64,000 bases of DNA, from NCBI GenBank assembly GCA_052426225.1, contig JBNJNM010000013.1, forward strand, positions 1,302,001 through 1,366,000, given 5' to 3'. Shown here in pieces: positions 16,518-56,350 of this stretch. The position numbers and the translations under genes were made by a program. The DNA comes from Zancudomyces culisetae HAW-14-8. Taxonomy: Eukaryota > Fungi > Kickxellomycota. Numbering within the stretch: position 1 is the stretch's first letter; every line of letters begins with the position of its first letter. A model generated the notes under the pieces. That model was not told the origin of the DNA. It ran no database searches and saw nothing but the letters and a program-made list of their open reading frames with translations.

Positions 16518-18425
16518 TATCTATATTCTGAAACGTTCTAATCATGATAGTGATACCGTTCTTTCATTCAAAAATATTGAATGGATCTGCTATTATATAT
16601 TCAAGTACTGTACTAACATCGTTCATTCTTTGCCTATTTACAGCTATAGACTAAAATATTTGTAGTACATATTTTATTTTTTTGATATTTTTTTATCTAT
16701 TTTTTATGATAAATACAAACTTCTCACCTTTTATTCAGTGTTATATGTTTTCTAAAAAAAAGTTTAAAAATAGAAATTAAAGCACAATAAATTATTAAAA
16801 CTGTTGATATAAGTTATTGCTTCACGAAAAATTAAGCACAGCAATAAAAATGAAATGTGAACCTATTAGATTTAATAATATAATATAAAAACAAGTGTTA
16901 GTAATATGGCATCATCAGAACAAAACTAAAATATTTCACTATTTGTATGTAAATAAAAAACTAAACAAAAATAAGGTTAAGTTGGTTCTGCACCAACCAT
17001 TTCTACCTTACACATGGGTCGGTAATAGACCAGGTCTTAGGAATATAAATTCTGCTGAACCTGAGAAAGCAAAACTTGCTTTCCGTAAAATACTGTCAAT
17101 TAAAACTGGAAGATAGTAATTAAGGAAATCTTCGATACTCTGTCAGAATTCGAAACAAGCTTTTACATCGAAAAAAAGAAAGCCTGCATATAGGCCATAC
17201 GTCGATTATACAAATAGTAGTAATTTACATAGATTATTGGTTCACTGAATTCTTGATAATTGAACTTTGTTATTCATAGAAAAACAACTTATCCCATTAA
17301 TAAACTTGAAAAGAAAAAGTTTAAATCAATAGTTAATGCAACCATTATTGATAAACACGGACAACTAATATCATTACATCAATAAAAATGTTAAATGTAT
17401 GTTCAAAATAAAAAATAAAATTATAGATAAACAAAAAAGTCATCATAAAAAAAGCAATAGGCTATGATTATATGTTCGATTTAAACTGTGAAATGTCAAT
17501 TCTAATTATGTAAATAGTTATTTAGTCTAGTTTAAATATCAAAAACAGAAATATAGATAGCTAAAATAATACTTTAAGAATACACAGTATTTAAATCTAA
17601 ACTAGAAATCTTTTATAATAAAATTATTGAACCTATAAAAAAGTAATTCAAATTATTCATTAAGCAAAATTAATATTATTTCAATAGTAGAAATTTAAAC
17701 TTAATTTTAGTAATCCAGATTTTAACTATAAATAATAAATTAAGCTAAAAATTATAACATTATATAAAATAGATTATATCATATGTAACATATTAACTTT
17801 ATTTGAGGTAGAGTAAATTATTATGTTTTAAATAGAAATTGAAGAAAATAGTTTAAGCTAGTGAGTTTATTTCAGGGTAAAGTACTAAAAGAAAAAATAA
17901 CTGTAAAAAGACGCATCAGAGGTGTTTTGTTAATAATAAATTAAATAATTTTGGTAAATACAGATTAAATAATGTAATGATTCAAAAATAGATTAGCTTT
18001 AAATTGTTACTATAAATAAAGTAAGTTCTAAAAGAAAATATATGATAATTTAGATACTATGTCGTCTAAAGTCATTATCGAAATGTTTTGAAATTCAAAT
18101 TTACAATGAAGTTCCTTATTAATAGATTAATCATTTTATATATAAAAATTGTATAAAACGTTATTTGCTATAAGAATAGAATACTAAATTATGGTATATT
18201 AATAATAAATACTACTTTTATATCTATTATTAAATACTTTAAAAATCTCTATGCATTTTCAATTCATATAATAATAGACTATATATTTATGTAAATCTAA
18301 AGTTGTTCACTTAATATCCAGCCAGCTGTTCAATTAATAATCTTTATACTCTTTCGAATTCTATACTCGTCTCGAGTTGAATTACTATAAGGCTAAAATC
18401 GAAATTGATACGCTAAAAAATATAT

Positions 18426-18855
18426 TGTAATATATAATAGATGTTATTAATATCTGATATATTTTTCAGCTAATGTGATGGCTGGGTTTGGTATAACACT
18501 GGTTATGTCAGTTATACTAAGGTCTCGGATCACTTCACTAGTTTTGATTGCCGAAATAAGAGTGATTAATATCTTTTATTATTGTTATAATAATAATAAA
18601 ACACCAAGTAAACTATACAGTATCAAGTGCTATTTGCTATTAATAAGTATTAAAAATTATATGTAAAAGTATTCCGTTAAAAAGGAAAAGCGTATTTTTC
18701 GTTATCGGCTTCCGTTAATTCACTGATTATTCTATTAAACAACTTTACAATTGTAGTTATTTTAATATATATACAATTACACGTTAATTGGTAGTTACAA
18801 TGTGCTAGGAACGGAAATATTTAGCTAGCTAAAAGTATTGATACGCTCTACTACA
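18426..18855 (-). mobile_element. Family-E solo LTR (diverged)
   Basis: TG...CA termini and colinear similarity to the E LTR at 49560-50000. Flanks ATAT/ATGT may be a decayed 4-bp TSD. An older E-like remnant lies immediately to the left (~18250-18425). Confidence 0.8.
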
Positions 18856-18893
18856 ATGTTAGTTCAAATGTTGAACTTAACAAACTTTGCTAT

Positions 18894-19334
18894 TGTAATA
18901 TATTGTAGATGTTATAAGTTATCTGATATATTTTTCAGCTAATGTGATGGCTGAGTTTGGTATAGCACTGATTCTGTCAGTTATACTCAGGTCTCGGATC
19001 ACTTCACTAGTTCTGTTTGCCGTATGAAGAATGTTTTAAATACTTTTTATTATTGATATAATACTAATAAAACACTTAGTAAACTATATCAGTAAGGTGC
19101 TATTTTCAATTATTAAGTATATTTAAACGTAATTGTAAAGTATATTCCGCTAAGAAAGGCTAAAGATGTTTATTTTCCTTGTCCGCTTCGCTTTTATTCC
19201 CTGATCGTTCAGATATTCAACTTTACTGTTATAAATATTTAGATATAAATTAACTACAAGTTAATTGGTAGTTATATTATGCTAAGGAATCGCAATTGAT
19301 TCGCTAGCAAAAAGTATGTAGCCGTTATACTACA
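18894..19334 (-). mobile_element. Family-E solo LTR, chimeric (441 bp)
   Basis: The first ~170 nt are identical to the E 5' LTR. The remainder matches the 55551 LTR variant better. Flanks are non-matching (TTAC/ATAG in element sense). Confidence 0.9.
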
Positions 19335-19415
19335 GTAAACGTTATACTACACTATAACAAATTAGACATACATTAATATTTATAATTTATGTAAAAAAAC
19401 AAATTAAACCCAAAA

Positions 19416-19497
19416 TGGTATCAGTGAGATTCGAACTCACGCCTCTTTCGAGACCGCAACTTGAGTGCGGCGCCTTAGACCGCTCGGCCATGATACC
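19416..19497 (-). tRNA. tRNA-Leu(CAA), copy 1
   Basis: Acceptor stem GGTATCA/TGATACC-A, A-box TGGCCGAGCGG, anticodon arm CCGCA-CTCAAGT-TGCGG, long variable arm, B-box GTTCGAATC, followed by a TTTT terminator. Confidence 0.97.
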
Positions 19498-19504
19498 CCT
19501 ATTT

Positions 19505-22500
19505 TGTTAACTTTCGACCCTTTTCTGCTAGTAGTCGTAGTTATTCGTATTTAGTTGGTTTAAAATTTAATAGAAAAGTTAATTATCTACTTGTTTTGTT
19601 CGAAACTCTAACTAACTATTAAGACTTGCTTATTATTTTGGTTATTATTCTTTATTTTTTATTGCTAAAAAGTTGTTATCCTAAAAGTTATTCTTCCAAA
19701 CTATAAATAAAATTTATATATAAACTATTTTTTTTCCATCTATTTTGTTATCTCAATTTTTTTGTGTTATCAATTTTTGTTTTGTAATTTCTTGGCTCAT
19801 TAAAAAAACCCAAATTGTTAGGGAAAAAAGAGTCCAATTTTTCCACTAATTTTAATATAGTAATTTATCAGAATTGACTTTGTCAATTCGTATTTTTTAT
19901 AATATATAATTAATTATGCAACAGAACCCCCATCCCAAATTGGACGTACAGGGTTTTTAAAACGCTGCAACTTCGATCTAAGCTGTGTAGTAACTTCAGG
20001 AACCATTCGATTACTATGGAAAAAACTTTTCAGTGAATCGCCATTCACAATGTCACGATTTCCATCCGAATCTGCGATCAGGTAAGCACCTAAATTTAGT
20101 TTTTTCAACACTCGGTATGGACCTTCCCATACCTCCTGAAACTTGTCGGTAACGTGTTCAATCAGTTTTAAGACCATTTCGTCAACTTTGAAATTTACTA
20201 ATCTTACTCTTCGGTCATATATTAACTTCATATTTTGCTTTGCTTTGACACTTTTTTGATAGCCTATGCTTCGTAGTTCGGGTATACTGGTGTTTATGGC
20301 TGCAATTCTTTCCTGGATGGCGAGATCTAAATCGCTGATTTCGGCCGGCGGAGACCATAACGCAGGCGTACTTAACTTTACTCCGTATAGTAGTTCGGCC
20401 GGGCTCATGCCTGTGCTTCTGTTTCTCATTGTCCTGATAACCAGTAGCGACTTCCATAAGTAAGAGTCCCAATTGTTTTTGTCTGCTTTGCATTGTCTTG
20501 CTAACGTATTTTTTAGGGTTTGGTTCAGGCGCTCGACCTGACCATTTGACTGCGGGCGATACGGTGTGGATGGTGTATGTTTAATTCCGAGGTACTTATA
20601 AACTGTGTCTGCTGCTTCGCTGATAAAACCCGAGCCTCTATCAGTGATTATTTGATCGGGGGTACCGTAGTACTGAACTATGTGAGTTATTATAAAGTTA
20701 ATTATAGTATCCGATTTTATATTTTCTACGGCCTCAGCTACAGGCCAGCGCGTAAAATAGTCAATGCCCGTGAGAATGTAACGGTTTCCTTGAGCAGATA
20801 CTGGACTAATAGGGCCAACTGCATCTAGTCCAAAGATGCCAAAAGGTTTGTGGACGTATATCGGCTGAAGCTCGTTGTTCCTATTGCGATTTCCAATATA
20901 TCTCTGACATACTAGACATTCTTTTACTACTTTTTTAACAGTTTTAAATAAATCGTTTCCTGTATACTTCTCTGCGATTCTCCTCCACGTATTCTCGATT
21001 CCTTGATGAGACTCGTCATGAATCTCTTTAACCTTTTCAGTTATGTTATTTCTTAATAAAACTTCCTTCCAAACTTCCTTACATAATTTGAATAATTTGT
21101 TGTTGATAAGCTTGAATTTTTTAGATAAATAATTAATCTTTTTCTTTGACACTTCGTCGCTTTGCTCTGGGTACCTATTATTTAGTAAATATTCTAAAAT
21201 AGTTTCGTTAGATATTTTTGTTACAGAAAATACATCTATAACTTCCTCAACCGATGTAGTAGGTTCTAATCTTGATAGGGCATCAGCGGGGTTTGACTTT
21301 CCTTTGCAATGGACAATTGTATAGTCATAATTTCGAAGAATCATAGCCCACCTGGCTACTCTTCCGGCTATATCTTTTCCATTGAACAAATTCAGTAAAG
21401 CTTTATGGTCCGTACGTATAGTGAAATGGCGTCCCCACAGGTAATGTTTGAATTTTTTTACGCCCCAAATTACAGCTAAACCCTCGAGATGGGTAATAGA
21501 GTAATTTCTCTCATGCTTGTTTGTGGTTTTACTAGCAAAACAAATAGGTCTCTCGCCAAGTTCCGAAGATTGTGAAAGTATAGCACCAACGCCTTCAATT
21601 GAAGCGTCAGTGGTAAGTATAAACTCTGAATCCCAATTTGGATGAGCTAATGTGGGTGCGGTACAAAGGCTTTGTTTTAATAAATTAACTGCATTTTCTT
21701 GTTCAATAGACCATTTCCAAGTGTTTTCTTTCCTAAGTAGTTTGACTAAAGGCGCGGAAATCAATGCATAACGGTCCACGAATTTGCGATAATACCCGAC
21801 TAGACCGAGAAAAGATTGTAGTTCCTTGACGTTATTAGGTACCTTTGCTTCTGTAATTGCTTTTATTTTATCATTTGTAGTACCAATTCCCTCAGAAGAC
21901 ACGGTATGTCCCAAGTAACACAATTTATTCATTCCTAATAAACACTTATCACTATGCAGTTGAATTTTATGTTGTCTAAGTAGCTCAAATACCTTTTTTA
22001 AATCCTCCACATGCTGCTCAACTGACTGAGAGTAAATAATAATGTCGTCAATAAAAACGACTGCGATCTTCCAAAGTACTGGCGAAAGGGCTTTCTCCAT
22101 AAGTCGTTGAAAAGAGGCCGGGCTGTTTGTCAGCCCAAACGGCATGACATTGTAGCAGTAGCTACCGCCTCCAGGGATTGCAAACGCGGTTTTTAATCTG
22201 TCTTTGGCTGCCATTCTTATTTGCCAAAACCCAGATAGCGCGTCTAAGCTGGTAAATATTTTGCTTCCGGCAAGCGACATAAATATATCATCTATAGTAG
22301 GTAACGGATAACAATCCTTTTTGGTTACCTGGTTCAGCTTCCTATAATCTGCACATATCCTTAACCTGCCATTCTTTTTATAAACTGTTACGACTGGCGA
22401 ACACCACTCTGAATAACACGGTGAAATTATTCCTTTATTCTCCATTTCAATTAACTCATTTCTAACCTTTTCTTGCATATGATAGGGAATTCTGTATGGG

Positions 22501-24821
22501 CGCTGCTTGATCGGTGTATGATCTGTTAGTTCAATACTATGCTCTGTGAGATTAGTTTGGGTAAGCTCCCCTATGTCTTCAACAAAGATATCAGCATATT
22601 GCTCTCGTAGTTTGATAAACCTTTCATTCTCGATTTGCTTGTTATCACTTTCAACACCATTTTCACTCTTCACCATAAAATATAGCTCAGTTTCTTGTGG
22701 CCAGTAAGTCGTATCTTCTGCAAGTATTTTCATTGGTATAACTAATATTTCTGAATGTGTGTGTATCTTTAGTTCTCTGCTTCTTGGATCTATAATCCCG
22801 TGGTGCCTATACAACCAATCTGTGCCGAGAATTAAAGTACTTCCTTTGCGATTCATAACTATGAGCTCTGCTTCTAGTAAGTGATTTCCTATAGTTATAG
22901 GTACTTTGTTCATAACACCTTCAGTGAGATGTTTTGTTCCATCAGCTGTTACCAACACTTGTCTGTGCCAACCCTCTGGTTCTATGCCCCACTGCTCAAC
23001 CATGCTTGGTGTAGTTACAGAACAAGCGGCTCCAGAGTCAACAACAGCCCAATAGTTTTTGTTGAATACCGTGACCATGACCCGGCAGTTGCTGATTTTT
23101 TGTGGTAATATCCTGATTTCATTTACTTCTTGTTTTTTTATTTTTTTAGAAAGACTATTAAACTCTGTTGCTATGGTAGGAGAAACGGCTATTAACTGAG
23201 GTAGACTAATCTTTGGATAAAACTGGTTAAATTCAGATTGTAGATTGAATGGCTCGACGTTTTCGATAATGCGCTGGATGGTTTTCTGTTTTTTATTCAC
23301 TATAGTGACTTCAGGTGTAACTTCCATATCCATGTCCACAACATTATCTGTTATAGTTGCCTCAGGTTTTATAATAACAGGTTTCATCTTTCTAACTGGT
23401 TTATTATCACTTATATATGGCTTACTGATATTTGATTTAGCTTTTTGCCTTTGCACTAAGTAAACATCATTATCTGGCGTGTCATCAGTGTCAATATCCG
23501 TGTCATCGACTGGTAGTAACTCAATAGTGCTGATTTCTTTTTTACTTTGTACCTCATCTGTTTTGGTAGTTCCAATCTTTGTACACTGACTCTTGTAGTG
23601 TCCTGTTGTTCTACAGATAGAACAGTACGGTGGCCTTTGATAACGCTGTTGCATACTTTTACTTATAGCAATGTCAATTTTCTTTTCAACAACCTCTTCG
23701 ACTTTTGAAAGTAAGTTTATACTCCATTCTTCCATCTTGGATATCATCTCATCATAACCAATCTTTTGATCAGTCATTTCTTTTATTGGTTTGCCAGGTC
23801 CGGTTAGTCTGTAAGATTTTGATGTAGATGAATTTGTCTCTGCGATGTCTGTAGAATTGTAACTAGGGGTATCTATATCCAGATTTATGGCATTTATGAT
23901 AGTATCCCACTCTTGATAATTTGATTCTAGGACTCTTGCTTTATATTTTGGACTCAATGCACTGATTAACCAATTGACCTTATGTTTGTCATCTGTTATA
24001 CCAGATTTTTGTAGAGCTATTTCTAAAGCATACTCAAATTCGTCAACAGAATTGTAACCTGACTGACAAATGCTTTTTAGTGTCTCGATTGACTGATGAG
24101 CTTTGATTTTATTTATGAACTTTTTATTGAATGAAGAAACGACAGAATTCCAATCGGTGAATGTACTCTTTTGCCTAATATACCAAATCTTTTCACGGTT
24201 ACCTAGATGTGCAGGTAAATATTTTATTAGATCTTCGTCAGACCAATTTCTGAGTCTGGCACTCAAACTGTACGAATCAATCCAATCTTCTGGGTTGTCA
24301 ATTTCTGAGTTAAACTTTTCAACTAGTGTCATGTTTGATTTAAAGGTGTTTATTTAATATTTTAGCTATAAAACGGACTCCAAGTCCTGGCTGGATCACC
24401 ACTGTTAACTTTCGACCCTTTTCTGCTAGTAGTCGTAGTTATTCGTATTTAGTTGGTTTAAAATTTAATAGAAAAGTTAATTATCTACTTGTTTTGTTCG
24501 AAACTCTAACTAACTATTAAGACTTGCTTATTATTTTGGTTATTATTCTTTATTTTTTATTGCTAAAAAGTTGTTATCCTAAAAGTTATTCTTCCAAACT
24601 ATAAATAAAATTTATATATAAACTATTTTTTTTCCATCTATTTTGTTATCTCAATTTTTTTGTGTTATCAATTTTTGTTTTGTAATTTCTTGGCTCATTA
24701 AAAAAACCCAAATTGTTAGGGAAAAAAGAGTCCAATTTTTCCACTAATTTTAATATAGTAATTTATCAGAATTGACTTTGTCAATTCGTATTTTTTATAA
24801 TATATAATTAATTATGCAACA
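19505..24821 (-). mobile_element. Ty3/Gypsy LTR retrotransposon, family A, full length
   Basis: 419-bp LTRs at 19505-19923 and 24403-24821 look identical. TG...CA ends, 4-bp TSD ATTT (19501-04 / 24822-25), PBS TGGTGATCCAGCCAGG and PPT GGGATGGGGG. Confidence 0.96.
19914..24332 (-). CDS. Gag-Pol polyprotein of element A (single ORF: CA, CCHC, PR, RT, RNase H, IN)
   Basis: CSICRTTGHYKSQC, VVDSGA, VMPFGL, FIDD, TTDAS, HxxxH...CxxC, integrase D-D-E (GLDA, ITDRG, GQVER) and WEGPY. Confidence 0.96.
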   Translation of the reverse strand: MTLVEKFNSEIDNPEDWIDSYSLSARLRNWSDEDLIKYLPAHLGNREKIWYIRQKSTFTDWNSVVSSFNKKFINKIKAHQSIETLKSICQSGYNSVDEFEYALEIALQKSGITDDKHKVNWLISALSPKYKARVLESNYQEWDTIINAINLDIDTPSYNSTDIAETNSSTSKSYRLTGPGKPIKEMTDQKIGYDEMISKMEEWSINLLSKVEEVVEKKIDIAISKSMQQRYQRPPYCSICRTTGHYKSQCTKIGTTKTDEVQSKKEISTIELLPVDDTDIDTDDTPDNDVYLVQRQKAKSNISKPYISDNKPVRKMKPVIIKPEATITDNVVDMDMEVTPEVTIVNKKQKTIQRIIENVEPFNLQSEFNQFYPKISLPQLIAVSPTIATEFNSLSKKIKKQEVNEIRILPQKISNCRVMVTVFNKNYWAVVDSGAACSVTTPSMVEQWGIEPEGWHRQVLVTADGTKHLTEGVMNKVPITIGNHLLEAELIVMNRKGSTLILGTDWLYRHHGIIDPRSRELKIHTHSEILVIPMKILAEDTTYWPQETELYFMVKSENGVESDNKQIENERFIKLREQYADIFVEDIGELTQTNLTEHSIELTDHTPIKQRPYRIPYHMQEKVRNELIEMENKGIISPCYSEWCSPVVTVYKKNGRLRICADYRKLNQVTKKDCYPLPTIDDIFMSLAGSKIFTSLDALSGFWQIRMAAKDRLKTAFAIPGGGSYCYNVMPFGLTNSPASFQRLMEKALSPVLWKIAVVFIDDIIIYSQSVEQHVEDLKKVFELLRQHKIQLHSDKCLLGMNKLCYLGHTVSSEGIGTTNDKIKAITEAKVPNNVKELQSFLGLVGYYRKFVDRYALISAPLVKLLRKENTWKWSIEQENAVNLLKQSLCTAPTLAHPNWDSEFILTTDASIEGVGAILSQSSELGERPICFASKTTNKHERNYSITHLEGLAVIWGVKKFKHYLWGRHFTIRTDHKALLNLFNGKDIAGRVARWAMILRNYDYTIVHCKGKSNPADALSRLEPTTSVEEVIDVFSVTKISNETILEYLLNNRYPEQSDEVSKKKINYLSKKFKLINNKLFKLCKEVWKEVLLRNNITEKVKEIHDESHQGIENTWRRIAEKYTGNDLFKTVKKVVKECLVCQRYIGNRNRNNELQPIYVHKPFGIFGLDAVGPISPVSAQGNRYILTGIDYFTRWPVAEAVENIKSDTIINFIITHIVQYYGTPDQIITDRGSGFISEAADTVYKYLGIKHTPSTPYRPQSNGQVERLNQTLKNTLARQCKADKNNWDSYLWKSLLVIRTMRNRSTGMSPAELLYGVKLSTPALWSPPAEISDLDLAIQERIAAINTSIPELRSIGYQKSVKAKQNMKLIYDRRVRLVNFKVDEMVLKLIEHVTDKFQEVWEGPYRVLKKLNLGAYLIADSDGNRDIVNGDSLKSFFHSNRMVPEVTTQLRSKLQRFKNPVRPIWDGGSVA

Positions 24822-24826
24822 ATTTT

Positions 24827-27800
24827 TGTTATATTTTTTGGGTATAAAATATATTTTTATTATAAAACTTATATCCTAACTTTCAACACTATGCTATTCT
24901 TGTATATTAAATATTACTATGTATTGAAAACAGTGTATATTATATATAGTTTTGTACTTATATTTTGTATATCTTTTCGTTTATTCTCTTACTAATTCTT
25001 TATTTTTTGACTAAAATCACTTAAAAAACTAAAAAAACTAAAACTAACTAATTTTTTATCTACTTTATCAAATTTTATAATTTTTATGCTATTTTTTAGC
25101 GATTAGAAAAATTTGCCAGCAACAAAAAACTAATCAAAAAAAATGTCGTATCTGCTATACGACAGATTCCCCCCCTTAAGCGCGGATGCCCTCATCGCGC
25201 CTTGGCTGCTTGAACCGTTTGAGTTTTGTCTTCAGAGTGGTTGTTACATCAGGGATCATGTGGTTACTCGATATATACTTCTTCAACATATCTCCATGAA
25301 CGAGCTCCCGGTTGCCTTCATTATCGTTTATGATATATGTCCCTTTACTCAGTACTCTTTCCACTCTATACGGGCCTTCCCAATAATGCTCCAGTTTGGA
25401 TCGTTCCATATCCACTAGTTTCAAAACAAATTCACCCGGTTCGAACCTAAATAGTTTTACCTTCACATTATATCTTTCCGCTTGCACCTGTTTAGACTTT
25501 ACTGATCTTCGTAGTCCTATTTCTCTCAACTGCGGCAACTCGTCTTTAATCTGCTTCACTCTACTAATTATCAATTCCTCGATATTATCTATGTCTCCAT
25601 TATAATTCCATGTAGACGGTAACTCCAAATCGATACCGTATAGCATCTGAGCTGGTGATAATCCAGTTGATTTATTCCGTAATGTTCTGATTACTAGCAA
25701 GGTTTTCCACAAATATGAATCCCAACTTTGCTTATCATTCCGACACTGCTTTATAAGCACGTTAACTAATGTCTGATTCAGTCGCTCTACCTGCCCATTA
25801 CTTTGGGGTCGGTAGGCGGTCGTCGGTGTATGATTTATACCAAGCCACTCATATACCTGTGTTGCTGCTTCAGATAAAAAACTCGGTCCTCTATCGCTTA
25901 TCAGCTGTTGTGGAACACCATAGTATGCTACCACTTCGTTTACTAAAAAGTTTACAATCGTATTACTCTGGATGTTTGGAACGGCAGCTGCAATAGGCCA
26001 TTTAGTAAACAGATCGATTGCCGTCAGAATGAACCTGTTACCATTAGCCGAGACCGGTGAGATGGGACCGACTGCGTCAATTCCGACAATTTGGAATGGC
26101 TTCGAAGATAATATCGGAACCAACGGGTGTCGTCGCGATCTTGCCCCTTTATAATGCTGGCATGTCCTGCAACTTTCCACTATCTGTTTAACTTCCTTAT
26201 ACAAGTTCCTGCCTGTGTATTTTTGAGTGACTCTATTCCAAGTGTTTTCGATCCCTTCATGACCCTCCTCATGAATTGATCTTATCAGAGCTCTGCTGTT
26301 TTCTGAGTGTAATACTACTTTAGTTGTGTTATTTACTACTTTCAATAACTTACCATCCGTGACTATATAATGTTTTGCCCCCCTCTTAAGCCTCCTCTTG
26401 TACTCCTCATCAGCTTGATTGGGCAGTGTCCCATCAACAATATAGGATGTAATATCCTCATACTCTAGTCTGTCCATAGCATACACCTTCAGTTCGTTAA
26501 TAGTTTTTTCCGACTCTTCCTGGTGCAGTAGCCGGGAAAGTGCATCTGCCGGATTAACGGCTCCTGGTAGATGTTCTATTTCGTAGTCAAAGTTACGGAG
26601 ATACATTGCCCAGCGGGCAACTCTTCCTGTGATTTCCGAACCATGGAATAACTGCAGCAAGGACTTATGATCCGTTCTAATTCTAAATTTTTTTCCATAA
26701 ACGTAGAACTTAAACTTTTTCACGGCCCAGATGACCGCGAGCCCCTCAAGATGGCTAATGGCGTAGTTTTTTTCAGATTTTGTAGTCGTTCTGCTTGCGT
26801 ATTCTATCACCTTTTCGCCTTCGTCTGTGAATTGAGTCAGTACCGCTCCTATTCCTACGATTGAAGCATCCGTCGTAATAACAAATTCTCTAGTCCAATC
26901 GGCATGTCCAAGTACAGGCGCCGATGCCATTAGCTCCTTTAGCTGTCTCAATGCTGCTTCCTGCTCTGTATCCCAGCTCCATACACTTTGCTTTCTGAGT
27001 AACTTAGTAAGTGGCTGTGTAACCTTTGCATAGTTTGGTATGAATCGGCGGTAATAGCCTGTTAATCCCAGTGCCGATTGTAATTCCTTTACGTTGCGTG
27101 GTGACCTAATATTCATAATAGCTTCTACCTTCTTAGCACTTGTCCCTATTCCATTTTTTGAGATTGTGTGTCCAAGGTATTCCAACTCTGTGAAACCTAT
27201 TACGCACTTATCCGAATGCAATTGTATGTTATGCTCCTTAAGTAACGACAAAACTCGTTTTAGATCTTCTCTATGCTCCTCTACACTCCTTGAATAAACT
27301 ATAACATCATCTACAAAGACGACTGCGCACTTCCACAACACTGCATTTAACGCCTTTTCCATCGCTCGCTGAAATGTCGCCGGACTGTTGGTGAGTCCGA
27401 ACGGCATAACGTTATATTCGTACGCACCGCTACCGGGTATGGCGAAAGCTGTTTTCGATTTATCTGCCGGGTGCATTCTTATTTGCCAGAATCCGCTCAT
27501 GGCGTCAAGCGAGCTAAAGATGGCTGCACCTGATAGAGCCATAAACAGATCCGCAATAACGGGAAGTGGATAACTATCCTTTTTCGTTACCTCATTTAAC
27601 CGGCGATAGTCTGCGCAAATACGGATTTTTCCGTTCTTTTTGTGAACGACAACTACGGGAGCGCACCACTCAGAAGTAGTGGGCGATATGATCCCTTGTT
27701 TCTCCATTTCTACTAACTGGTTTGCAACTTCTTCTTGTAGTCTGAATGGAATTCTATAGGGTCTTAGCCTAATTGGCATATTATCATTTAGCACTATTCG

Positions 27801-33000: not shown

Positions 33001-33232
33001 TTATTCCCCTGTCCTTCATTAGCGATAGCTCTTTTTTTACTTCTTCCTGAAGAGTTTTTGGGATGCGATATGGTCTTAACTTTATTGGATTGTCATCCTT
33101 TAGTATAATTTTGTGCTCTGTGATATTTGTTTGTGTAAGTTCGTGTAGCTCACTCACAAATATATTTTTATACTCATGTAGTACTTCATGAAATGATTCA
33201 TTTTCATCTGTTTCCAACAAGTTATAACTTCC
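30086..33232 (-). mobile_element. Ty3/Gypsy element, family C, 5'-truncated (3' LTR 30086-30479 plus RT-RH-IN)
   Basis: A G-rich PPT precedes the LTR. Gag, protease, PBS and 5' LTR are missing. The break coincides with a TGTCA LTR-like end at 33233. Confidence 0.9.
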
Positions 33233-33238
33233 TGTCAT
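30497..33238 (-). pseudogene. Truncated pol (RT-RNase H-integrase) of element C, frame still open
   Basis: 913 aa with FVDD, TTDAS, GQVER and WIGPY. The apparent ATG lies in the adjacent LTR-like unit. Confidence 0.85.
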
Positions 33239-35113: not shown

Positions 35114-35144
35114 ATCTTTTCCCATTCAACAAGGGGAAACCCCC

Positions 35145-37440: not shown

Positions 37441-37441
37441 A

Positions 37442-44127: not shown

Positions 44128-44131
44128 CAAA

Positions 44132-49388: not shown

Positions 49389-49396
49389 AAAATAGG

Positions 49397-49478
49397 GGTA
49401 TCATGGCCGAGCGGTCTAAGGCGCCGCACTCAAGTTGCGGTCTCGAAAGAGGCGTGAGTTCGAATCTCACTGATACCA
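49397..49478 (+). tRNA. tRNA-Leu(CAA), copy 2
   Basis: Exact reverse complement of 19416-19497, followed by a TTTT terminator. Confidence 0.97.
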
Positions 49479-49559
49479 TTTTGGGTTTAATTTGTTTTTT
49501 TACATAAATTATAAATATTAATGTATGTCTAATTTGTTATAGTGTAGTATAACGTTTAC

Positions 49560-52500
49560 TGTAGTATAACGGCTACATACTTTTTGCTAGCGAATCAATT
49601 GCGATTCCTTAGCATAATATAACTACCAATTAACTTGTAGTTAATTTATATCTAAATATTTATAACAGTAAAGTTGAATATCTGAACGATCAGGGAATAA
49701 AAGCGAAGCGGACAAGGAAAATAAACATCTTGAGCCTTTCTTAACGGAATATACTTTACATATACGGTTTTTACATACTTAGTAATTGACAATAGTACTA
49801 CATTGAGATAGTTTACTTAGTATTTTATTATTATTACAACAATAATAAAAGTTATTAAAACATTCTTATTACGGCAAACAGAACTAGTTAAGTGATCCGA
49901 GACCTGAGTATAACTGACACAATCAGTGCTATACCAAACTCAGCCATCACATTAGCTGAAAAATATATCAGATAACTTATTACATCTACAATATATTACA
50001 ATTGGGGGCTCTGCCGGGAAATTTAATCTCCATATATCTCAGTTGAGGGAGAATTGAATGTTTATTTACAAAAAGATTCAATTACAGTAGTACAACAACG
50101 TCAAAGTATACAGATTCAAATGATGGAAAAGCCTGTCATATTTGAGGCTCAAGGTTCATTAGATCCAAAAGAGTGGATTTACAGATATAAATTAATAGCT
50201 AAAGTAAACAAATGGTCAGATACCGATGCTATTGAGTTGATTCAGCTTTATTTAGGAAAGAAAGAATTACAATGGTACAAGAAAAACACTAAAGAGTTTA
50301 AAGACTGGGATACTCTGGTTACCAAGTTTACAGAGAAATATTCAAGCAAAGAGATGAATTTTGTATACTGGAAGAAAATTCAGATGATCAAACAGGAAGA
50401 TTTTGCCTCAGTTGAAGACTTTGAGTTAGAACTAGAGGAATTGTTTGAGAAGGCAGAAGTAACAGATGAAGGTGTCAAATGGAACTGTTTGATGAACGCA
50501 CTAAGTGAGAAGAACAAGCGCAAGGTGTTAGAGTCAGATAATAAGAAATGGGCAGATGCAATTAAGCTAATTGGGAAGTCGGAAAAGATTAAAGAAGCAG
50601 TAAAACCGAAGCCAGTAAAACCGAAGCCACTTAGTTCCAAAGACAGATTGAATGAGGCCAGGAAAAGATTTCAGGATAGCAAAGAAAAGTTTGAGCAGCG
50701 AAATAAGATGCGGGAAAAGGCAAAGCAGGACAATGACTATAATGACATGATGAAGCAGTTTGAAAAGCTAAGTGTAAATGTCATGAATAAAGTAGATGAG
50801 GCGGTTGATAGGAGATTTAATAATACAAGAGGGAGAACTTACCATGATCGTTTTATACCCACATGCTACCACTGTGGAAGGAAAGGACACAGGAAATATG
50901 AATGCAGACAGTTAGCCCAAGAAGAAACGGAGTATGAAACAAGCAGCGAAGATTCAGACGATTTAAACTGTATCGAGGTCGAAGATGTTAGCTGTGATGA
51001 AGTTTTTGGAGCAGACCGCGTGGATAAAAATAAACCTGCCATCGGACCCTATAAAAAAAATGAATATTTAAATAATAATATTAATAAATTTGAAGTTAAA
51101 CCAAAAGAAAATAGAATAAAAAATACAAAAGTTATAAAACCATATAAAACAATTAAAGAGATCGAAATGAAGAAAGCACCTACATTAAGAAGTCGAGAAT
51201 CAGATTCGAAAGCCAAAGCGTATACAAAGAAGAAATACACGATTAAAGCGGCAGAAAACACAGACAGTTACTCACTCAAGGAAGATTTAGGAGCGGTATA
51301 CCCTAAAATTAGTATGATACAATTACTAGAAGCCTCACCAAAACTCGCAAAGGAAATGGCAAACCTGTGCAAACGAGTAGAGGATAAAGAGGTAAACGAA
51401 ATAAAATATAAGGAGACAAAAACTAGTAATTGTAAGGTTACCGTGGAAATATTCGGACAAGAAGTGAAGACCATTCTGGATACGGGTGCAGCGTGTTCAG
51501 TTGCCACTCCCGAGTTAGTCGAGAATTGGGGACTTGAGGTAGAGCAGGATTCTAGTCAGATGATCATCACTGCAGACGGAAGTAAACACGCATCGTTGGG
51601 AAAGGTATTGGACGTGCCTATAAGGATAGGAAAGCAAATATTTAACGCGGATCTAACTGTAATGGAAAGACATGATCAATCGTTAATATTGGGTACCGAC
51701 TGGTTAGTCAGACACAAAGCAACTATAGATCTTGAAATATCACAACTAATAATTTCAAATGGAGAGCTTTCCGTTCACTTACCATTAAAAACTTCAAAGG
51801 CAACAGTACTGACAAGCTACGACGAATCCGAACTTTATGCTATAGTTAAAGAGAAATACATTGAAGTTGATAATAGTTTAGTAGATACAGATGAGAGAAT
51901 AATAAAGTTAGTTCAACAGTATAAAGGGATGTTTGTAAACGAATTGGAAGAATTAAAGCAGTCGGATACAACCGAACACAAAATTATACTTACCGAAGAG
52001 ATACCAATAAAACAGCGGCCATACAGGATACCTCAGGCAAAACAGCAGCTAGTGCGGAAAGAACTGGAGCTTATGGAACAGCATGGAATCATCTCACCAG
52101 CCTCTTCACCATGGTGCTCACCTGTGGTAGTAGTAACAAAGAAAAACGGTAAGCTTCGAGTGTGTGCAGATTATAGGAAATTAAATAGTATTACAAAGAA
52201 GGATACTTACCCGTTGCCAGTCATTGACGACATTTTCATGGCATTGTCCGGAGCGACGGTTTTCAGCAGCTTGGATGCTATGTCAGGCTTCTGGCAGATA
52301 CCTATGAGTAGAGAAGACAGAGATAAGACAGCGTTTGCTATCCCTGGAGGAGGAAGTTATATATACAATGTAATGCCGTTTGGTTTAACCAACAGCCCGG
52401 CTACATTTCAACGGGTTATGGAAGAGGTCTTACATTCAGTTCTGTGGTCCTGTGCTATTGTATTTGTCGACGACATTATAATCTATTCGAAGAACATGAA

Positions 52501-55477
52501 ACAGCATTTAGAAGATTTAGAACAAGTATTTAAGTTATTACAGGCAAGAAACATTCAGCTTCACAAAGACAAATGTGTTTTAGGAAAGGATGAAATAACT
52601 TACCTGGGACACAGGATTTCAAAGGAAGGGATAAGCACCTGTGAAGATAAACTAGCAGCAGTTAAAAAATTAGAATCTCCTAAGAATGTTAAAGAAGTAC
52701 AATCAATATTGGGATTAACAGGATATTACAGGAAGTTTATATATAACTATAGTAAAATATGTTTACCTTTAACTAACTTGCTGAAGAAGAATAAAGAGTG
52801 GACATGGTCAGAAAACGAAGAAAAAGCACTGGATCAGCTTAAACAAGCACTGCTCGACGCACCGGTGTTAGCACACCCTGACTGGAACAAAACATTTACC
52901 GTTACGACTGACGCATCGATAGACGGAATCGGAGCAATACTCTCCCAAGAGTACGATTCGGGAGATCGCCCTATTGCATATATAAGTAGAAAAACAACCA
53001 AACATGAGAGAAATTACTCAATCAGTCACCTAGAAGGGTTAGCTGTCGTTTGGGCTGTAGTTAAATTTAAATATTTTGTATGGGGCCGAAGGTTTATAAT
53101 AAAAACAGACCATAAAAGCTTGTTAAATCTGTTTAACGGAAAAGAACTTACGGGAAGAGTAGCTAGATGGGCCATGCTACTACGCAACTACGATTATGAG
53201 ATTCAGCACCTACCAGGAAAGAAAAACCCAGCAGACAGTTTATCCAGATTGCCAACCGAAATATTATCAGACGAAAACGATTCCGCAGCAGAATTTAGAG
53301 ATCTAAATTGTCTTGAGATAAGTGAATATAATAACATAATGAATGATATTCTAAATCCAAATAATTTACCAAATTCCCAGGACGATACTAGAACATATAC
53401 CAGAGTTCAAAATACGAAGCGATATTTCCTTAAGGACGGATCATTATATATAAAAATCGGAAATACTGAAAAGCAGGTATTAAATACGGATAACGCAAGC
53501 GAAGAAATATATAAAGTGCATTTCGAGACGCACGAAGGCGTAGAAAACACTTATAACCGAATTAAACAATTGTTTCATGGAAAGAATTTATTCAAAATAA
53601 CGAAAGATATAGTAAAAAGTTGTGAAGTTTGTCAACTGTATAAAGGAAATAAAAGCAAAAAAAATTACCTAACAACTGTTGAAGGAAACCGCCCATTCGA
53701 AATATGGGGAATAGACGCCATGGGTCCAATTAACCCAGTTTCAAAGAGCGGAAACCGCTACATACTAACTGCGATAGACTACTGCACCAAATGGCCAGTA
53801 GCCTTACCAGTTCCGAATCTATTAAGTAGCACCATAATTAATTTCATTATATATAAAATAGTAATGGACTATGGAGTCCCGACTCAATTAGTTACAGACC
53901 AAGGTTCAAGTTTCATGTCCGAAGCAACCAAGGCAGTATACAAGTGGTTGGGCATAAAGCATGCACCCACCTCAGGTTATCGACCTCAGAGCAACGGACA
54001 GGTCGAACGATTAAACAGGTCTATAAAGTCAATAATGTCGAAACAAATAGATGAAGACTACCTTAACTGGGATACCTACCTTTGGAAGACACTGCTAATA
54101 CTACGGACACTGAGCAGCAAGACAACTGGCTTCACACCGGCAGAACTACTCTATGGTAAGGACCTGACTATGGCACACAACTGGACTCCTGCCAATCTAA
54201 TCGACACAAGGAACGAGTTAGTGCACCATAGGATCGAATTCCTTAGCACTGGATTAAAGGAAATTCGAGAACTAGGTTTGGAAAATTCGAAAGTAAAGAA
54301 GTTGAAACAAAAAGGATACTACGACAAAAAAGTGAAAGAAAAATTATTTAAGAAAAACGACATTGTTTTGAAGTACATCGAAGGCGAAAAAACGAAATTT
54401 CAAAGAATTTGGAAAGGGCCGTACAAAGTCGAAAAAATTTTGATAAACGGAACATACGTAATTGTCGATAGCGAAGGAAATAGCGAACTAGTCAATGGCG
54501 ACACTATTAAATTATTTCACGATTCAAATTAGCCAATTAATTATTTATTTACTATGAAATGTTCGAAAATTGATAAGAAAAAAAATTTTTGAATTGAAAA
54601 ATAAACTCGAAAACACGAAACGACTACATAAAAATCAGAAAAACCGAAAAATCGAATTGAAATAAAAATTAGAAAAGACAGAAATCGAATTGAAAAAAAA
54701 ATCAGAAAAGATAAATAATCGAACGGATAAAAATCAGAAAAGTCAAAAAATCAAATTGATAAAAATCAGAAAATTAAACAAAGCTACAACATAAAAATCA
54801 TAAAATATAATAATCCAAAAACATTAATATATACTTTATTTTTAACAGAATTTAGGGCGAGATTAACGATATGGAAAACATAAACGGAGAAATGAAGTAA
54901 CATTAATACGAAATTGGAACAACGAGATTCGAGATTATCGAAATGGGCTTTGAAAAGCGGAGTATAGGAGATTAGGAATCGAAATTGAAGTTTCGAGATT
55001 CGAGATGAGGACACTTCGAAATAAAGCGGGGGGTATTGTAGTATAACGGCTACATACTTTTTGCTAGCGAATCAATTGCGATTCCTTAGCATAATATAAC
55101 TACCAATTAACTTGTAGTTAATTTATATCTAAATATTTATAACAGTAAAGTTGAATATCTGAACGATCAGGGAATAAAAGCGAAGCGGACAAGGAAAATA
55201 AACATCTTGAGCCTTTCTTAACGGAATATACTTTACATATACGGTTTTTACATACTTAGTAATTGACAATAGTACTACATTGAGATAGTTTACTTAGTAT
55301 TTTATTATTATTACAACAATAATAAAAGTTATTAAAACATTCTTATTACGGCAAACAGAACTAGTTAAGTGATCCGAGACCTGAGTATAACTGACACAAT
55401 CAGTGCTATACCAAACTCAGCCATCACATTAGCTGAAAAATATATCAGATAACTTATTACATCTACAATATATTACA
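49560..55477 (+). mobile_element. Ty3/Gypsy element, family E, full length, nested in an older E LTR
   Basis: 441-bp LTRs at 49560-50000 and 55037-55477 look identical. TSD TTAC, PBS TGGGGGCTCTGCCGGGA (tRNA-Pro type), PPT AAAGCGGGGGG. The interrupted older LTR is at 49543-49559 and 55478-55550. Confidence 0.96.
50120..54532 (+). CDS. Gag-Pol polyprotein of element E (likely start MMEKP at 50120)
   Basis: CYHCGRKGHRKYEC, ILDTGA, FVDD, TTDAS, GQVER, WKGPY. The ORF-track start at 50054 is a TTG. Confidence 0.93.
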   Translation: MMEKPVIFEAQGSLDPKEWIYRYKLIAKVNKWSDTDAIELIQLYLGKKELQWYKKNTKEFKDWDTLVTKFTEKYSSKEMNFVYWKKIQMIKQEDFASVEDFELELEELFEKAEVTDEGVKWNCLMNALSEKNKRKVLESDNKKWADAIKLIGKSEKIKEAVKPKPVKPKPLSSKDRLNEARKRFQDSKEKFEQRNKMREKAKQDNDYNDMMKQFEKLSVNVMNKVDEAVDRRFNNTRGRTYHDRFIPTCYHCGRKGHRKYECRQLAQEETEYETSSEDSDDLNCIEVEDVSCDEVFGADRVDKNKPAIGPYKKNEYLNNNINKFEVKPKENRIKNTKVIKPYKTIKEIEMKKAPTLRSRESDSKAKAYTKKKYTIKAAENTDSYSLKEDLGAVYPKISMIQLLEASPKLAKEMANLCKRVEDKEVNEIKYKETKTSNCKVTVEIFGQEVKTILDTGAACSVATPELVENWGLEVEQDSSQMIITADGSKHASLGKVLDVPIRIGKQIFNADLTVMERHDQSLILGTDWLVRHKATIDLEISQLIISNGELSVHLPLKTSKATVLTSYDESELYAIVKEKYIEVDNSLVDTDERIIKLVQQYKGMFVNELEELKQSDTTEHKIILTEEIPIKQRPYRIPQAKQQLVRKELELMEQHGIISPASSPWCSPVVVVTKKNGKLRVCADYRKLNSITKKDTYPLPVIDDIFMALSGATVFSSLDAMSGFWQIPMSREDRDKTAFAIPGGGSYIYNVMPFGLTNSPATFQRVMEEVLHSVLWSCAIVFVDDIIIYSKNMKQHLEDLEQVFKLLQARNIQLHKDKCVLGKDEITYLGHRISKEGISTCEDKLAAVKKLESPKNVKEVQSILGLTGYYRKFIYNYSKICLPLTNLLKKNKEWTWSENEEKALDQLKQALLDAPVLAHPDWNKTFTVTTDASIDGIGAILSQEYDSGDRPIAYISRKTTKHERNYSISHLEGLAVVWAVVKFKYFVWGRRFIIKTDHKSLLNLFNGKELTGRVARWAMLLRNYDYEIQHLPGKKNPADSLSRLPTEILSDENDSAAEFRDLNCLEISEYNNIMNDILNPNNLPNSQDDTRTYTRVQNTKRYFLKDGSLYIKIGNTEKQVLNTDNASEEIYKVHFETHEGVENTYNRIKQLFHGKNLFKITKDIVKSCEVCQLYKGNKSKKNYLTTVEGNRPFEIWGIDAMGPINPVSKSGNRYILTAIDYCTKWPVALPVPNLLSSTIINFIIYKIVMDYGVPTQLVTDQGSSFMSEATKAVYKWLGIKHAPTSGYRPQSNGQVERLNRSIKSIMSKQIDEDYLNWDTYLWKTLLILRTLSSKTTGFTPAELLYGKDLTMAHNWTPANLIDTRNELVHHRIEFLSTGLKEIRELGLENSKVKKLKQKGYYDKKVKEKLFKKNDIVLKYIEGEKTKFQRIWKGPYKVEKILINGTYVIVDSEGNSELVNGDTIKLFHDSN

Positions 55478-55550
55478 TTACATAATTTTTGCTAGCTAAT
55501 CAATCGCGATTCCTTAGCGAAGTTAACCACCAATGAATGCATAGCGAGAT

Positions 55551-55985
55551 TGTAGTATAACGGCTACATACTTTTTGTTAGCGAATCAATTGCGATTCCT
55601 TAGTAGAAGATAACTACCAATGATAGCTAGCAGAATATATAGTAAAAATGATCTAAGATAGTAAAGTGAATAACAAACCGAATAAAACAAGAGCGGACAA
55701 CGAAAATAGCATCTGCAGCCTTTCTAACAAGAATATACTTTACATATACGTTTATATATACTTAATAATTGAAAATAGCACCTTACTGATATAGTTTACT
55801 TAGTGTTTTATTAGTATTATATCAATAATAAAAGGTATTTAAAACATTCTTCATACGGCAAACAGAACTAGTGAAGTGATCCGAGACCTGAGTATAACTG
55901 ACATAATCAGTTCTTTACCAAACTCAGCCGTCACATTAGCTGAAAAATATATCAGATAATTAATAACATCTACTATATTTTAAAA
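55551..55985 (+). mobile_element. Family-E solo LTR variant
   Basis: Begins TGTAGTATAACGGCTACA and is colinear with the E LTR. The 3' end is decayed. Confidence 0.85.
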
Positions 55986-56350
55986 TATACTGGTTATGTC
56001 ATCTATACTCAGGTATTTGATCAAGTAATTATTACTGTTTACCAATAGTGAATGAACCACTTTTAATTTTATTATTATATTATAAATTTATACAAATGTA
56101 ATATCAATTCCTTCTGGACTTTAAAGAAATCTATATAGTTTGAATATGTAAATGTGAGATTATTCGGATTTGAAAGTCTAGTTTCTCGCGTTTCACTATC
56201 TGGTCTCGTTTTTATTTGCCGTTTCTTTTGCTGTTCAATTTTAATACTTGATCATTCTATAAAAATTTACCACTAGCGCTCTCATTAGTTGTCTTATAGC
56301 TATTGAATTGTATTTGATTTGCTAGCAAAAGAATGTTGCTAATGTACTAC
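55986..56350 (-). mobile_element. Old E-like solo LTR, reverse orientation
   Basis: CTGGTTATGTCA..TATACTCAGGT and TGCTAGCAAAAG...TACTACA resemble the reverse complement of the E LTR. Confidence 0.55.

What the first reader, a model, noticed from the sequence alone, without database searches (positions are those of the whole stretch)
18250..56350. Two-sided tRNA-targeting system: related Ty3/Gypsy families partition the upstream and downstream flanks of one tRNA-Leu gene
Seen: A ends 7 nt and B2 ends 8 nt from the mature tRNA 5' end. Removing A and one ATTT copy puts B1 at the same 8 nt. Further elements are stacked behind with gaps of 5 nt (A-B1), 2 nt (B1-C) and 4 nt (D-B2). Family E LTRs occur only on the 3' side, starting 64 and 81 nt after the tRNA end, mostly co-oriented with it. 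Known: yeast Ty3 integrates at Pol III start sites via TFIIIB, and Dictyostelium has separate upstream (TRE5, DGLT-A) and downstream (TRE3) tRNA-targeting elements. Inference: a lineage of single-ORF, chromodomain-less, 4-bp-TSD Gypsy elements in an early-diverging fungus has evolved both upstream and downstream Pol III targeting. I know of no description of this.
Basis: partly seen in the sequence, partly recalled or inferred. Interest (0 to 1): 0.88.

Follow-up and report, generated by a model that had tools for sequence, protein, structure and literature searches.

The report
Retrotransposons flanking both sides of tRNA genes
In the mosquito-gut fungus Zancudomyces culisetae, closely related Ty3/Gypsy jumping genes split tRNA genes between them: several families land 6-8 bases in front of the gene, and one derived family lands 20-250 bases behind it, which has so far been reported for LTR elements only in social amoebae.

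Summary
The window holds two inverted, recently duplicated copies of one tRNA-Leu(CAA) locus. Elements A, B and D end 7-8 nt from the mature tRNA 5' end. E-type LTRs lie only on the 3' side, starting at +64 and +81.

In the 27-Mb genome, 11 of 12 full-length A copies lie 6-12 nt upstream of a tRNA gene. So do copies of B, C, D and a sixth family, F. Each family keeps one orientation. All 31 near-intact E LTRs are accounted for. Twenty-five lie 22-250 nt downstream of a tRNA, representing about 21 independent events with 4-bp target duplications. The other six are the far LTRs of those same elements. None lies upstream.

E is nested inside the upstream-targeting clade, so its downstream preference is derived. 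E integrase stops just before a roughly 28-residue tail that all the upstream families share. That tail is a candidate targeting peptide, but this is inferred, not shown.

Earlier follow-ups of this scan already reported the upstream stacks in this genome. The look-ups I ran showed no follow-up on the downstream family. Two-sided targeting by Ty3/Gypsy elements is known in dictyostelids (DGLT-A and Skipper-2). I found no report of it in fungi. Verdict: a new variant of a known kind.

The parts
19416..19497 (-). tRNA-Leu(CAA), copy 1
   Evidence: ARAGORN and Rfam RF00005 at 58.5 bits.
49397..49478 (+). tRNA-Leu(CAA), copy 2, identical to copy 1
   Evidence: The tRNA plus 335 nt downstream is identical to copy 1.
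19505..24821 (-). Element A, a full-length Ty3/Gypsy. LTRs at 19505-19923 and 24403-24821 are 100% identical. ORF 19914-24332. ATTT target duplication. The 3' LTR ends 7 nt from the tRNA1 5' end, and the element is co-oriented with the tRNA.
19917..20006 (-). Coding region for the 30-residue C-terminal integrase tail of A. This tail is the motif shared by the upstream-targeting families.
   Evidence: Alignments. In one search the alignment of A's integrase to Ty3 stops at the SH3 C-terminal domain.
24827..30083 (-). Element B1, full length with 338-bp LTRs. It is an exact inverted copy of B2.
   Evidence: 0 mismatches in 5257 nt.
30086..33238 (-). Element C, truncated at its 5' end. 3' LTR at 30086-30479. 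The ORF 30497-33238 covers RT, RNase H and integrase only.
38481..44127 (-). Element D, full length. LTRs at 38481-38904 and 43703-44127 are 98.6% identical. ORF 38914-43626. It is divergent to tRNA2 and sits behind B2.
44132..49388 (+). Element B2, full length. ORF 44600-49039. The 3' LTR ends 8 nt from the tRNA2 5' end, and the element is co-oriented with the tRNA.
48956..49039 (+). Coding region for the 27-residue integrase tail of B2, plus the stop codon.
49543..49559 (+). 17-nt head of an older E-type LTR, starting 64 nt after tRNA2. It was split by the nested insertion of the young E.
   Evidence: Direct reading of the sequence. The remainder resumes at 55478.
49560..55477 (+). Element E, full length. 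LTRs at 49560-50000 and 55037-55477 are 100% identical. ORF 50054-54532. TTAC target duplication. It starts 81 nt after tRNA2.
54533..55036 (+). A-rich non-coding spacer of about 505 nt between E's stop codon and its 3' LTR. In A-D the ORF ends within 20 nt of the LTR or just inside it.
   Evidence: Three-frame translation.
55478..55982 (+). Older E-type LTR remnants behind the young E: 55479-55537, and 55551-55982 at 83% identity.
18426..19351 (-). E-type LTRs 3' of tRNA1: the 17-nt head at 19335-19351, an LTR at 18894-19334 (93%) and an LTR at 18426-18855 (79%).

Best explanation
Zancudomyces culisetae carries one clade of single-ORF Ty3/Gypsy retrotransposons without a chromodomain, and all of them use Pol III-transcribed tRNA genes as integration targets. 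Families A, B, C, D and F integrate with a 4-bp duplication covering about -8 to -4 from the mature tRNA 5' end. Each family has a fixed orientation: A, B, C and F run the same way as the tRNA, and D runs divergently. Repeated hits push older copies outward into stacks.

The most likely mechanism is that the intasome is tethered to the TFIIIB/TFIIIC complex at the Pol III start site, as for yeast Ty3. This is inferred. The integrase is built differently from Ty3's, however. After the SH3-like C-terminal domain it has only a conserved basic tail of about 28 residues, where Ty3 has a vestigial chromodomain.

Family E branches inside this clade as sister to B and C, and it has lost the tail. It integrates, also with 4-bp duplications, anywhere from about 20 to 250 nt downstream of the tRNA 3' end, past the T-run terminator. 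It does so in both orientations, and often into the head of an older E LTR. Its targeting is therefore regional rather than exact to the base. It probably uses a different contact, such as TFIIIC on its downstream side, the terminating polymerase, or the first downstream nucleosome. This too is inferred.

The window shows both behaviours on one tRNA-Leu(CAA) locus that was recently copied in inverted orientation.
For: All five ORFs run gag-PR-RT-RH-IN with no chromodomain hit.

Upstream families, genome-wide. Eleven of 12 full-length A copies lie 6-12 nt 5' of eleven different tRNA genes, all co-oriented. The twelfth sits in a stack above tRNA-Ser. B (2 copies), C (2) and F (2) lie at 6-11 nt and are co-oriented. 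D (5 copies) lies at 7-8 nt, always divergent. Solo LTRs with no tRNA in the fetched flank abut other LTR ends after 4-6 nt, which means they sit in stacks.

Family E. Of 31 LTRs at 91% identity or more, 25 lie 22-250 nt 3' of a tRNA and 6 are the distal LTRs of those same elements. Matching 4-bp duplications are seen at most sites. About 21 events are independent. The split between upstream families on the 5' side and E on the 3' side gives Fisher p about 3e-13. In a tRNA sample not chosen for transposons, at least 11 tRNAs have an E LTR within about 250 nt on the 3' side and none has one on the 5' side (coordinates compared by eye). At least 12 other loci carry both an upstream element and a downstream E-type LTR.

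Phylogeny. The Harpellales clade has 100% support. D is basal and E groups with C and B at 98%. A tree that keeps E outside the tail-bearing families is rejected (AU p=0.0145).

Integrase tail. It is conserved in A, B, C, D, F, two further Z. culisetae proteins, a Smittium culicis protein and one unnamed Logan (lgn) protein, P0002. E and two E-type Z. culisetae proteins end just before it. A's integrase aligns to Ty3 (7q5b) only as far as residue 1451 of 1547. That leaves no room for the chromodomain that contacts Brf1 in Ty3 (PMC8632968).
Against: - No insertion was observed as it happened. Everything rests on fixed genomic copies in one assembly.
- The Pol III start sites are not mapped, so 'at the start site' is inferred.
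- The link between tail and target rests on a single evolutionary loss, which is a correlation with n=1.
- E also differs from its relatives at many other residues and has a 505-nt 3' spacer.
- The tRNA list is incomplete. Only flanks of LTR hits and 63 scored Rfam hits were examined, and only 40 of 128 E candidates were scored.
- Some loci are segmental duplicates.
- I named the group for the AU test after seeing the tree.
Confidence: 0.85

Rival explanations
1. The elements integrate more or less at random. Only copies in harmless spots next to tRNA genes survive selection, so the pattern reflects retention rather than targeting.
For: The island lies between intact host genes: subtilase and P450 on one side, ABC transporter and Hsp70 on the other. 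The genome is compact at 27 Mb.
Against: Retention cannot explain positions exact to the base (6-8 nt) with a fixed orientation for each family. It also cannot explain the strict split by side. The 5' side plainly tolerates insertions, yet no E copy is found there, and the reverse holds for the 3' side. Copies with 100% identical LTRs, which have had little time to be filtered, already follow the rule.
Confidence: 0.04
2. E homes to older E LTRs by sequence preference rather than to tRNA genes. The tRNA association is inherited from a few founder insertions.
For: Young E copies often sit in the first 17-43 nt of an older E LTR: in the window, and at C23:767302, C12:1431265 and C9:864576.
Against: Many E insertions lie directly in unique, non-LTR DNA 22-62 nt from the tRNA end and have their own 4-bp duplications. 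Examples are Val +22, Ile +29, Lys +32, Ile +36, Gln +37 and Lys +47. Nesting into LTR heads is what a distance-based window predicts once an older LTR occupies that window.
Confidence: 0.05
3. The apparent recurrence is mostly segmental duplication or assembly error involving a few tRNA-plus-transposon blocks.
For: The window itself is an inverted duplication. A similar inverted B pair exists on C12. Four E loci share identical flanks with another locus.
Against: After removing duplicates, 21 E events and more than 20 upstream events remain. They sit at different tRNA species and have different flanks and target duplications.
Confidence: 0.03

Closest known systems
Ty3 of Saccharomyces cerevisiae, with Tj1 of Schizosaccharomyces japonicus and the Yarrowia and Candida Ty3-like elements
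   Same: All are Ty3/Gypsy LTR elements that integrate within a few bp of the Pol III start site upstream of tRNA genes without damaging the gene (PMC5911963, PMC8632968). Families A-D and F behave the same way, at 6-8 nt from the mature 5' end.
   Different: Ty3 and Tj1 have separate gag and pol frames. The elements here have one ORF. Ty3 integrase carries a vestigial chromodomain after its C-terminal domain that binds Brf1. The elements here have only a tail of about 28 residues. Orientation is fixed for each family here. I found no report of a downstream-targeting relative in yeasts.
DGLT-A of Dictyostelium
   Same: Single-ORF Ty3/Gypsy element without a chromodomain, found upstream of tRNA genes (PMC5006619).
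   Different: DGLT-A sits 13-33 bp upstream, against 6-12 nt here. It belongs to an amoebozoan lineage. I could not test its relationship to these elements because no DGLT-A sequence was at hand.
Skipper-2 of dictyostelids
   Same: A Ty3/Gypsy LTR element found 7-136 bp downstream of tRNA genes, over a broad window. It co-exists with the upstream-targeting DGLT-A (PMC5006619, PMC5911963). E's window of 22-250 nt is similar.
   Different: Skipper-2 is a chromovirus with a diverged (group II) chromodomain and two ORFs, and most copies have a polypyrimidine tract in place of a primer binding site. It is a separate lineage from DGLT-A. E has no chromodomain and a single ORF. Its primer binding site reads as complementary to the tRNA-Pro 3' end. 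E arose from within the upstream-targeting clade.
TRE3 non-LTR elements of Dictyostelium
   Same: They insert 40-150 bp downstream of tRNA genes, a window thought to be set by TFIIIC at the B box (PMC5911963).
   Different: TRE3 is a LINE-type element that integrates by target-primed reverse transcription and always lies in the tRNA's orientation. E is integrase-driven and is found in both orientations.

Membership tests
Ty3/Gypsy (Metaviridae) LTR retrotransposon | Domain order PR-RT-RNase H-IN in the polyprotein | tested here: met
   Pfam hits appear in that order in A, B, D and E. C keeps RT-RH-IN.
Ty3/Gypsy (Metaviridae) LTR retrotransposon | Direct LTRs ending TG...CA, a short target-site duplication, and a primer binding site and polypurine tract next to the LTRs | tested here: met
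   LTRs are 338-441 bp and end TG..CA. The 4-bp duplications are ATTT for A and TTAC for E. TGG-type primer binding sites and G-rich tracts can be read at the LTR borders.
Ty3-type integration directed by TFIIIB | Insertion within a few bp of the Pol III transcription start site upstream of tRNA genes | tested here: inconclusive
   The position is fixed at 6-12 nt from the mature 5' end at more than 20 loci. The start sites themselves are not mapped.
Ty3-type integration directed by TFIIIB | Integrase with a vestigial chromodomain C-terminal to the SH3 domain, contacting Brf1 | tested here: not met
   The alignment to 7q5b ends at Ty3 residue 1451 of 1547. Only 27-30 residues follow the SH3 domain in A-D and none in E. 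Pfam finds no chromodomain.
Ty3-type integration directed by TFIIIB | Physical contact between the integrase and TBP/Brf1 | not testable with these tools
   No host TFIIIB proteins were modelled and no complex job was sent.
Skipper-2 / chromovirus | Location tens of bp downstream of tRNA genes | tested here: met
   E lies 22-250 nt downstream, median 71, at 21 independent loci.
Skipper-2 / chromovirus | Chromodomain (group I or II) at the integrase C-terminus | tested here: not met
   E integrase ends directly after the SH3-like domain. Pfam finds no chromodomain.
Skipper-2 / chromovirus | Two ORFs (gag, then pol) | tested here: not met
   E has a single 1492-residue ORF running from gag to integrase.
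DGLT-A | Single ORF, no chromodomain, upstream of tRNA genes | tested here: met
   The distance differs, at 6-12 nt against 13-33 bp.
DGLT-A | Phylogenetic grouping with dictyostelid DGLT-A | not tested
The nearest relatives found are from Harpellales.

The most novel reading that the evidence does not exclude
Family E is a natural switch of target within one retrotransposon clade. Losing a roughly 28-residue C-terminal integrase tail removed the tether that places the intasome at the Pol III start site. What remained was a second, weaker affinity for the downstream side of the tRNA transcription complex. On this reading the tail is a small, portable upstream-targeting peptide. E would also be the first LTR retrotransposon outside the social amoebae shown to target the 3' side of tRNA genes.
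Probability: 0.3. Interest if true: 0.8.

Novelty: new variant of a known kind. Interest (0 to 1): 0.62.

Why it matters
Targeting of tRNA genes is the textbook case of a transposon choosing a safe landing site. How integrases read the Pol III machinery has been solved structurally only for Ty3. A 2018 review states that downstream insertion is found only in dictyostelids (PMC5911963).

Here a fungus shows both behaviours in sister families that are 45-58% identical. Both include copies whose two LTRs are identical, which suggests recent insertion. They differ by one clear-cut feature at the integrase C-terminus. That gives a matched natural pair for domain-swap experiments on what sets the side, the distance and the orientation of integration.

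It also shows that upstream targeting can work without Ty3's chromodomain. Finally, the stacked insertions on both sides of tRNA genes are a dated record of transposon activity in a little-studied fungal lineage.

Tried and rejected
- **Other Pol III genes.** Rfam at gathering thresholds found only tRNAs, both in the window and in 20 loci holding LTRs with no nearby tRNA. There was no 5S, U6 or 7SL. Those LTRs turned out to abut other LTRs in stacks.
- **Public reads.** Only two runs held 7-9% of the sampled words, and none was RNA. I therefore did not run read laying. Neither the assembly of the inverted duplication nor expression could be checked.
- **Conservation in Smittium culicis.** A tail-bearing element lies co-oriented upstream of a tRNA cluster, but a run of N hides the junction. 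This is consistent with upstream targeting but inconclusive.
- **B1 and B2 as independent hits at -8.** Rejected. They show 0 differences over 5257 nt, the tRNA flank is identical, and B1 has no target duplication. Undoing an inversion between the two B copies does not restore a duplication either.
- **Hidden C-terminal extension of E.** I looked for a downstream ORF or a frameshifted extension. None exists in any frame.
- **Complex prediction of integrase with TFIIIB.** Not sent. The host proteins would have needed intron-aware gene models, and a negative result would carry no information.
- **Allowance limit.** C-family loci and most A-family flanks were fetched as short pieces (250-nt flanks or about 0.9-kb stretches), two A flanks came from loci fetched earlier, and I did not attempt a full-genome map.
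Full report
**Observation**

ARAGORN and Rfam find two identical tRNA-Leu(CAA) genes, at 19416-19497(-) and 49397-49478(+). Their 5' ends face each other across 30 kb. The part of that interval that I analysed consists of Ty3/Gypsy elements; I did not annotate 33239-38480.

By exact extension of the repeats, the elements are as follows.
- A spans 19505-24821. Its 419-bp LTRs are identical and it has ATTT on both sides.
- B1 spans 24827-30083 and B2 spans 44132-49388. Both have 338-bp LTRs.
- C starts at 30086 and lacks its 5' half.
- D spans 38481-44127.
- E spans 49560-55477. Its 441-bp LTRs are identical and it has TTAC on both sides.

A ends 7 nt from the mature tRNA 5' end and B2 ends 8 nt from it. 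Removing A plus one ATTT copy puts B1 at 8 nt. All long ORFs read gag-PR-RT-RH-IN in one frame, with no chromodomain hit.

E-type LTRs occur only 3' of the two tRNAs. The '+64' LTR is the 17-nt head of an older E LTR. The young E inserted into it at +81, and the older LTR resumes after 55477.

**The locus is duplicated**

B1 and B2 differ at 0 of 5257 positions. The tRNA plus the next 335 nt is identical in both arms, with the first mismatch at 49732 inside the E LTR. B1 has no target duplication (CATA/AAAA) and B2 has an imperfect one (CAAA/AAAA). The two arms are therefore a recent inverted duplication or a conversion of one locus. A inserted afterwards into one arm.

The independent upstream events in the window are D, B and A. 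C's history is unclear. A similar inverted B pair exists on contig C12.

**Genome-wide test**

The window is C13:1302001-1366000 of a 27.09-Mb assembly in 25 contigs. I searched it with each LTR, fetched flanks (loci L001-L116) and ran ARAGORN on them.

*Upstream families*
- Family A: 11 of 12 full-length copies, all with LTRs at or near 100% identity, lie 6-12 nt upstream of a tRNA gene. The genes are Thr, Leu x2, Tyr x2, Ile, Ala, Val, Thr, Pro and Arg, and every copy is co-oriented with its tRNA. The twelfth copy sits in a stack whose innermost member is an A LTR 7 nt from tRNA-Ser. Three solo A LTRs lie at 7-8 nt.
- B has a solo LTR next to tRNA-Arg.
- C has copies 6 and 8 nt from tRNA-Phe and tRNA-His.
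- D has five copies at 7-8 nt, all divergent to the tRNA.
- A sixth family, F, has two copies at 7-8 nt.
- Solo LTRs with no tRNA in the fetched flank are followed after 4-6 nt by another LTR start. They are outer members of stacks.
- No other Pol III gene was found beside them.

*Family E*
- All 31 LTRs at 91% identity or more are accounted for. Twenty-five lie 22-250 nt (median 71) downstream of a tRNA 3' end, and six are the distal LTRs of those same full-length elements.
- Matching 4-bp duplications are visible at most sites.
- After removing four loci with identical flanks, 21 independent events remain, at many different tRNA species. Fourteen are co-oriented and seven opposite (p=0.19).
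- More diverged E-type LTRs (70-85% identity) are also found only on the 3' side.
- No E copy is on a 5' side and no A-D or F copy is on a 3' side (Fisher p about 3e-13).

Among 63 tRNA hits that were not chosen for transposons, at least 11 have an E LTR within about 250 nt downstream and none has one upstream (coordinates compared). At least 12 further loci carry both an upstream element and a downstream E-type LTR.

**Relationships**

The best protein hits to E are named Zancudomyces culisetae in NCBI, at 87-99% identity. Smittium culicis follows at 44%.

In a maximum-likelihood tree of the RT-RH-IN region rooted on chromoviruses, the Harpellales elements form one clade with 100% support. 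D is basal. Next comes a pair formed by a Smittium culicis protein and an unnamed Logan (lgn) protein, P0002. Then the A group is sister to (E,(C,(B, a Z. culisetae protein))), which has 98% support. A tree that holds all the tail-bearing families together without E is rejected (AU p=0.0145). I named that group after seeing the tree. Upstream targeting is therefore the ancestral state, and E's downstream habit is derived.

**The integrase C-terminus**

A, B, C, D, F, two further Z. culisetae proteins, the Smittium culicis protein and the unnamed Logan protein P0002 share a tail of about 28 residues after the SH3-like C-terminal domain. Its core reads M-[IV]-P-x-V ... L-x-x-K-L-x-R-F-K. E and two E-type Z. 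culisetae proteins stop immediately before it.

In E, the stop codon is followed by about 505 nt of A-rich non-coding sequence before the 3' LTR, and no frame is open. In A-D the ORF ends within 20 nt of the LTR or just inside it.

A's integrase aligns to the Ty3 chain of 7q5b only up to residue 1451 of 1547. In Ty3, the segment beyond that point is the vestigial chromodomain that binds Brf1, while the SH3 domain binds TBP (PMC8632968). These elements have no room for such a domain.

**Mechanism**

What is shown: integration is integrase-type with 4-bp duplications. Position and orientation are fixed for each upstream family. E has a broad downstream window and no significant orientation bias. 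The tRNA and its T-run terminator are never disrupted.

What is inferred:
- The upstream families are tethered to TFIIIB/TFIIIC at the Pol III start site, as Ty3 is. The duplicated 4 nt often contain CA, a typical start context.
- The conserved tail replaces Ty3's chromodomain as part of that tether.
- Having lost the tail, E uses another contact on the downstream side, such as TFIIIC, the terminating polymerase or a positioned nucleosome. Its frequent nesting into the head of an older E LTR follows from a window set by distance from the tRNA.

One A copy sits inside a Thr-Thr tRNA dimer, 8 nt before the second gene. Its duplication (CACT) regenerates the end of the first gene. So the measuring point is the tRNA gene that follows the insertion. 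It is not a sequence lying upstream of the tRNA transcription unit.

**Comparison and novelty**

Upstream targeting by Ty3/Gypsy elements is known from Ty3, Tj1, the Yarrowia and Candida elements, and DGLT-A. Downstream targeting by an LTR element is known only from dictyostelid Skipper-2. A 2018 review states that downstream insertion is found only in dictyostelids (PMC5006619, PMC5911963).

E is not a Skipper-2 relative by architecture. It has no chromodomain, it has one ORF, and it arose from inside the upstream clade. Searches of the held library found no paper on transposon targeting in Zancudomyces or Smittium, and none on fungal LTR elements downstream of tRNA genes.

Earlier follow-ups of this scan already described the upstream stacks in this genome. 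The look-ups that I ran showed no follow-up on the downstream family. Verdict: a new variant of a known kind.

**Limits**
- The evidence comes from one assembly, with no read-level or expression support.
- The tRNA and LTR maps are incomplete.
- The link between tail and target rests on a single evolutionary loss.
- The one informative Smittium junction is hidden by an assembly gap.

Noticed in passing
Genome-wide, for example L032 (C23:740978-741128) and C10:644242-644388; also L114:6446-6673 in Smittium culicis: Many tRNA genes are arranged as head-to-tail dimers or trimers with spacers of only 1-5 nt. Examples are Ala-Lys, Thr-Thr, Glu-Met, Ser-Val, Gly-Pro, Phe-Leu and Val-Glu-Met. This suggests polycistronic tRNA transcription units are common in Harpellales.
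   Followed up: partly
L084/L085 (C6:847881-853353): A full-length A element sits inside a tRNA-Thr(agt)-tRNA-Thr(tgt) dimer, 8 nt before the second gene. Its 4-bp duplication (CACT) regenerates the 3' end of the first tRNA.
   Followed up: yes
window 18426-30083 versus 44132-55982; also C12:1299798-1305052 and 1316550-1321804: There are large, perfectly identical inverted duplications of tRNA-plus-transposon blocks. In the window the block is B, the tRNA and 335 nt downstream. A second inverted B pair with identical flanks lies on contig C12. Their origin (fold-back, conversion or assembly artefact) is unresolved.
   Followed up: partly
window 54533-55036: E carries an A-rich spacer of about 505 nt, internally repetitive and non-coding, between its stop codon and its 3' LTR. 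Families A-D have nothing comparable.
   Followed up: partly
window 50001-50022; 24383-24402; 29726-29745: The primer binding sites differ between families. The sequence after E's 5' LTR reads as complementary to the 3' end of a tRNA-Pro. A and D share a second type and B has a third.
   Followed up: no
window 5466-9836 (+): A 1456-residue ORF has no Pfam hit. About 2.7 kb of it encodes (T-N)n and P-T-N repeats, and this is the source of the extreme GC skew at 6-10 kb.
   Followed up: partly
window 33239-38480: An AT-rich core (24-25% GC) lies between C and D. It has no long ORF.
   Followed up: no
D family loci (C11:1963917, C13:266551, C6:1831922, C8:841088, C9:864656, window D): Family D always lies divergent to the tRNA, with its 5' LTR next to the gene. 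A, B, C and F always lie co-oriented. Each family's intasome seems to dock in a single polarity.
   Followed up: partly
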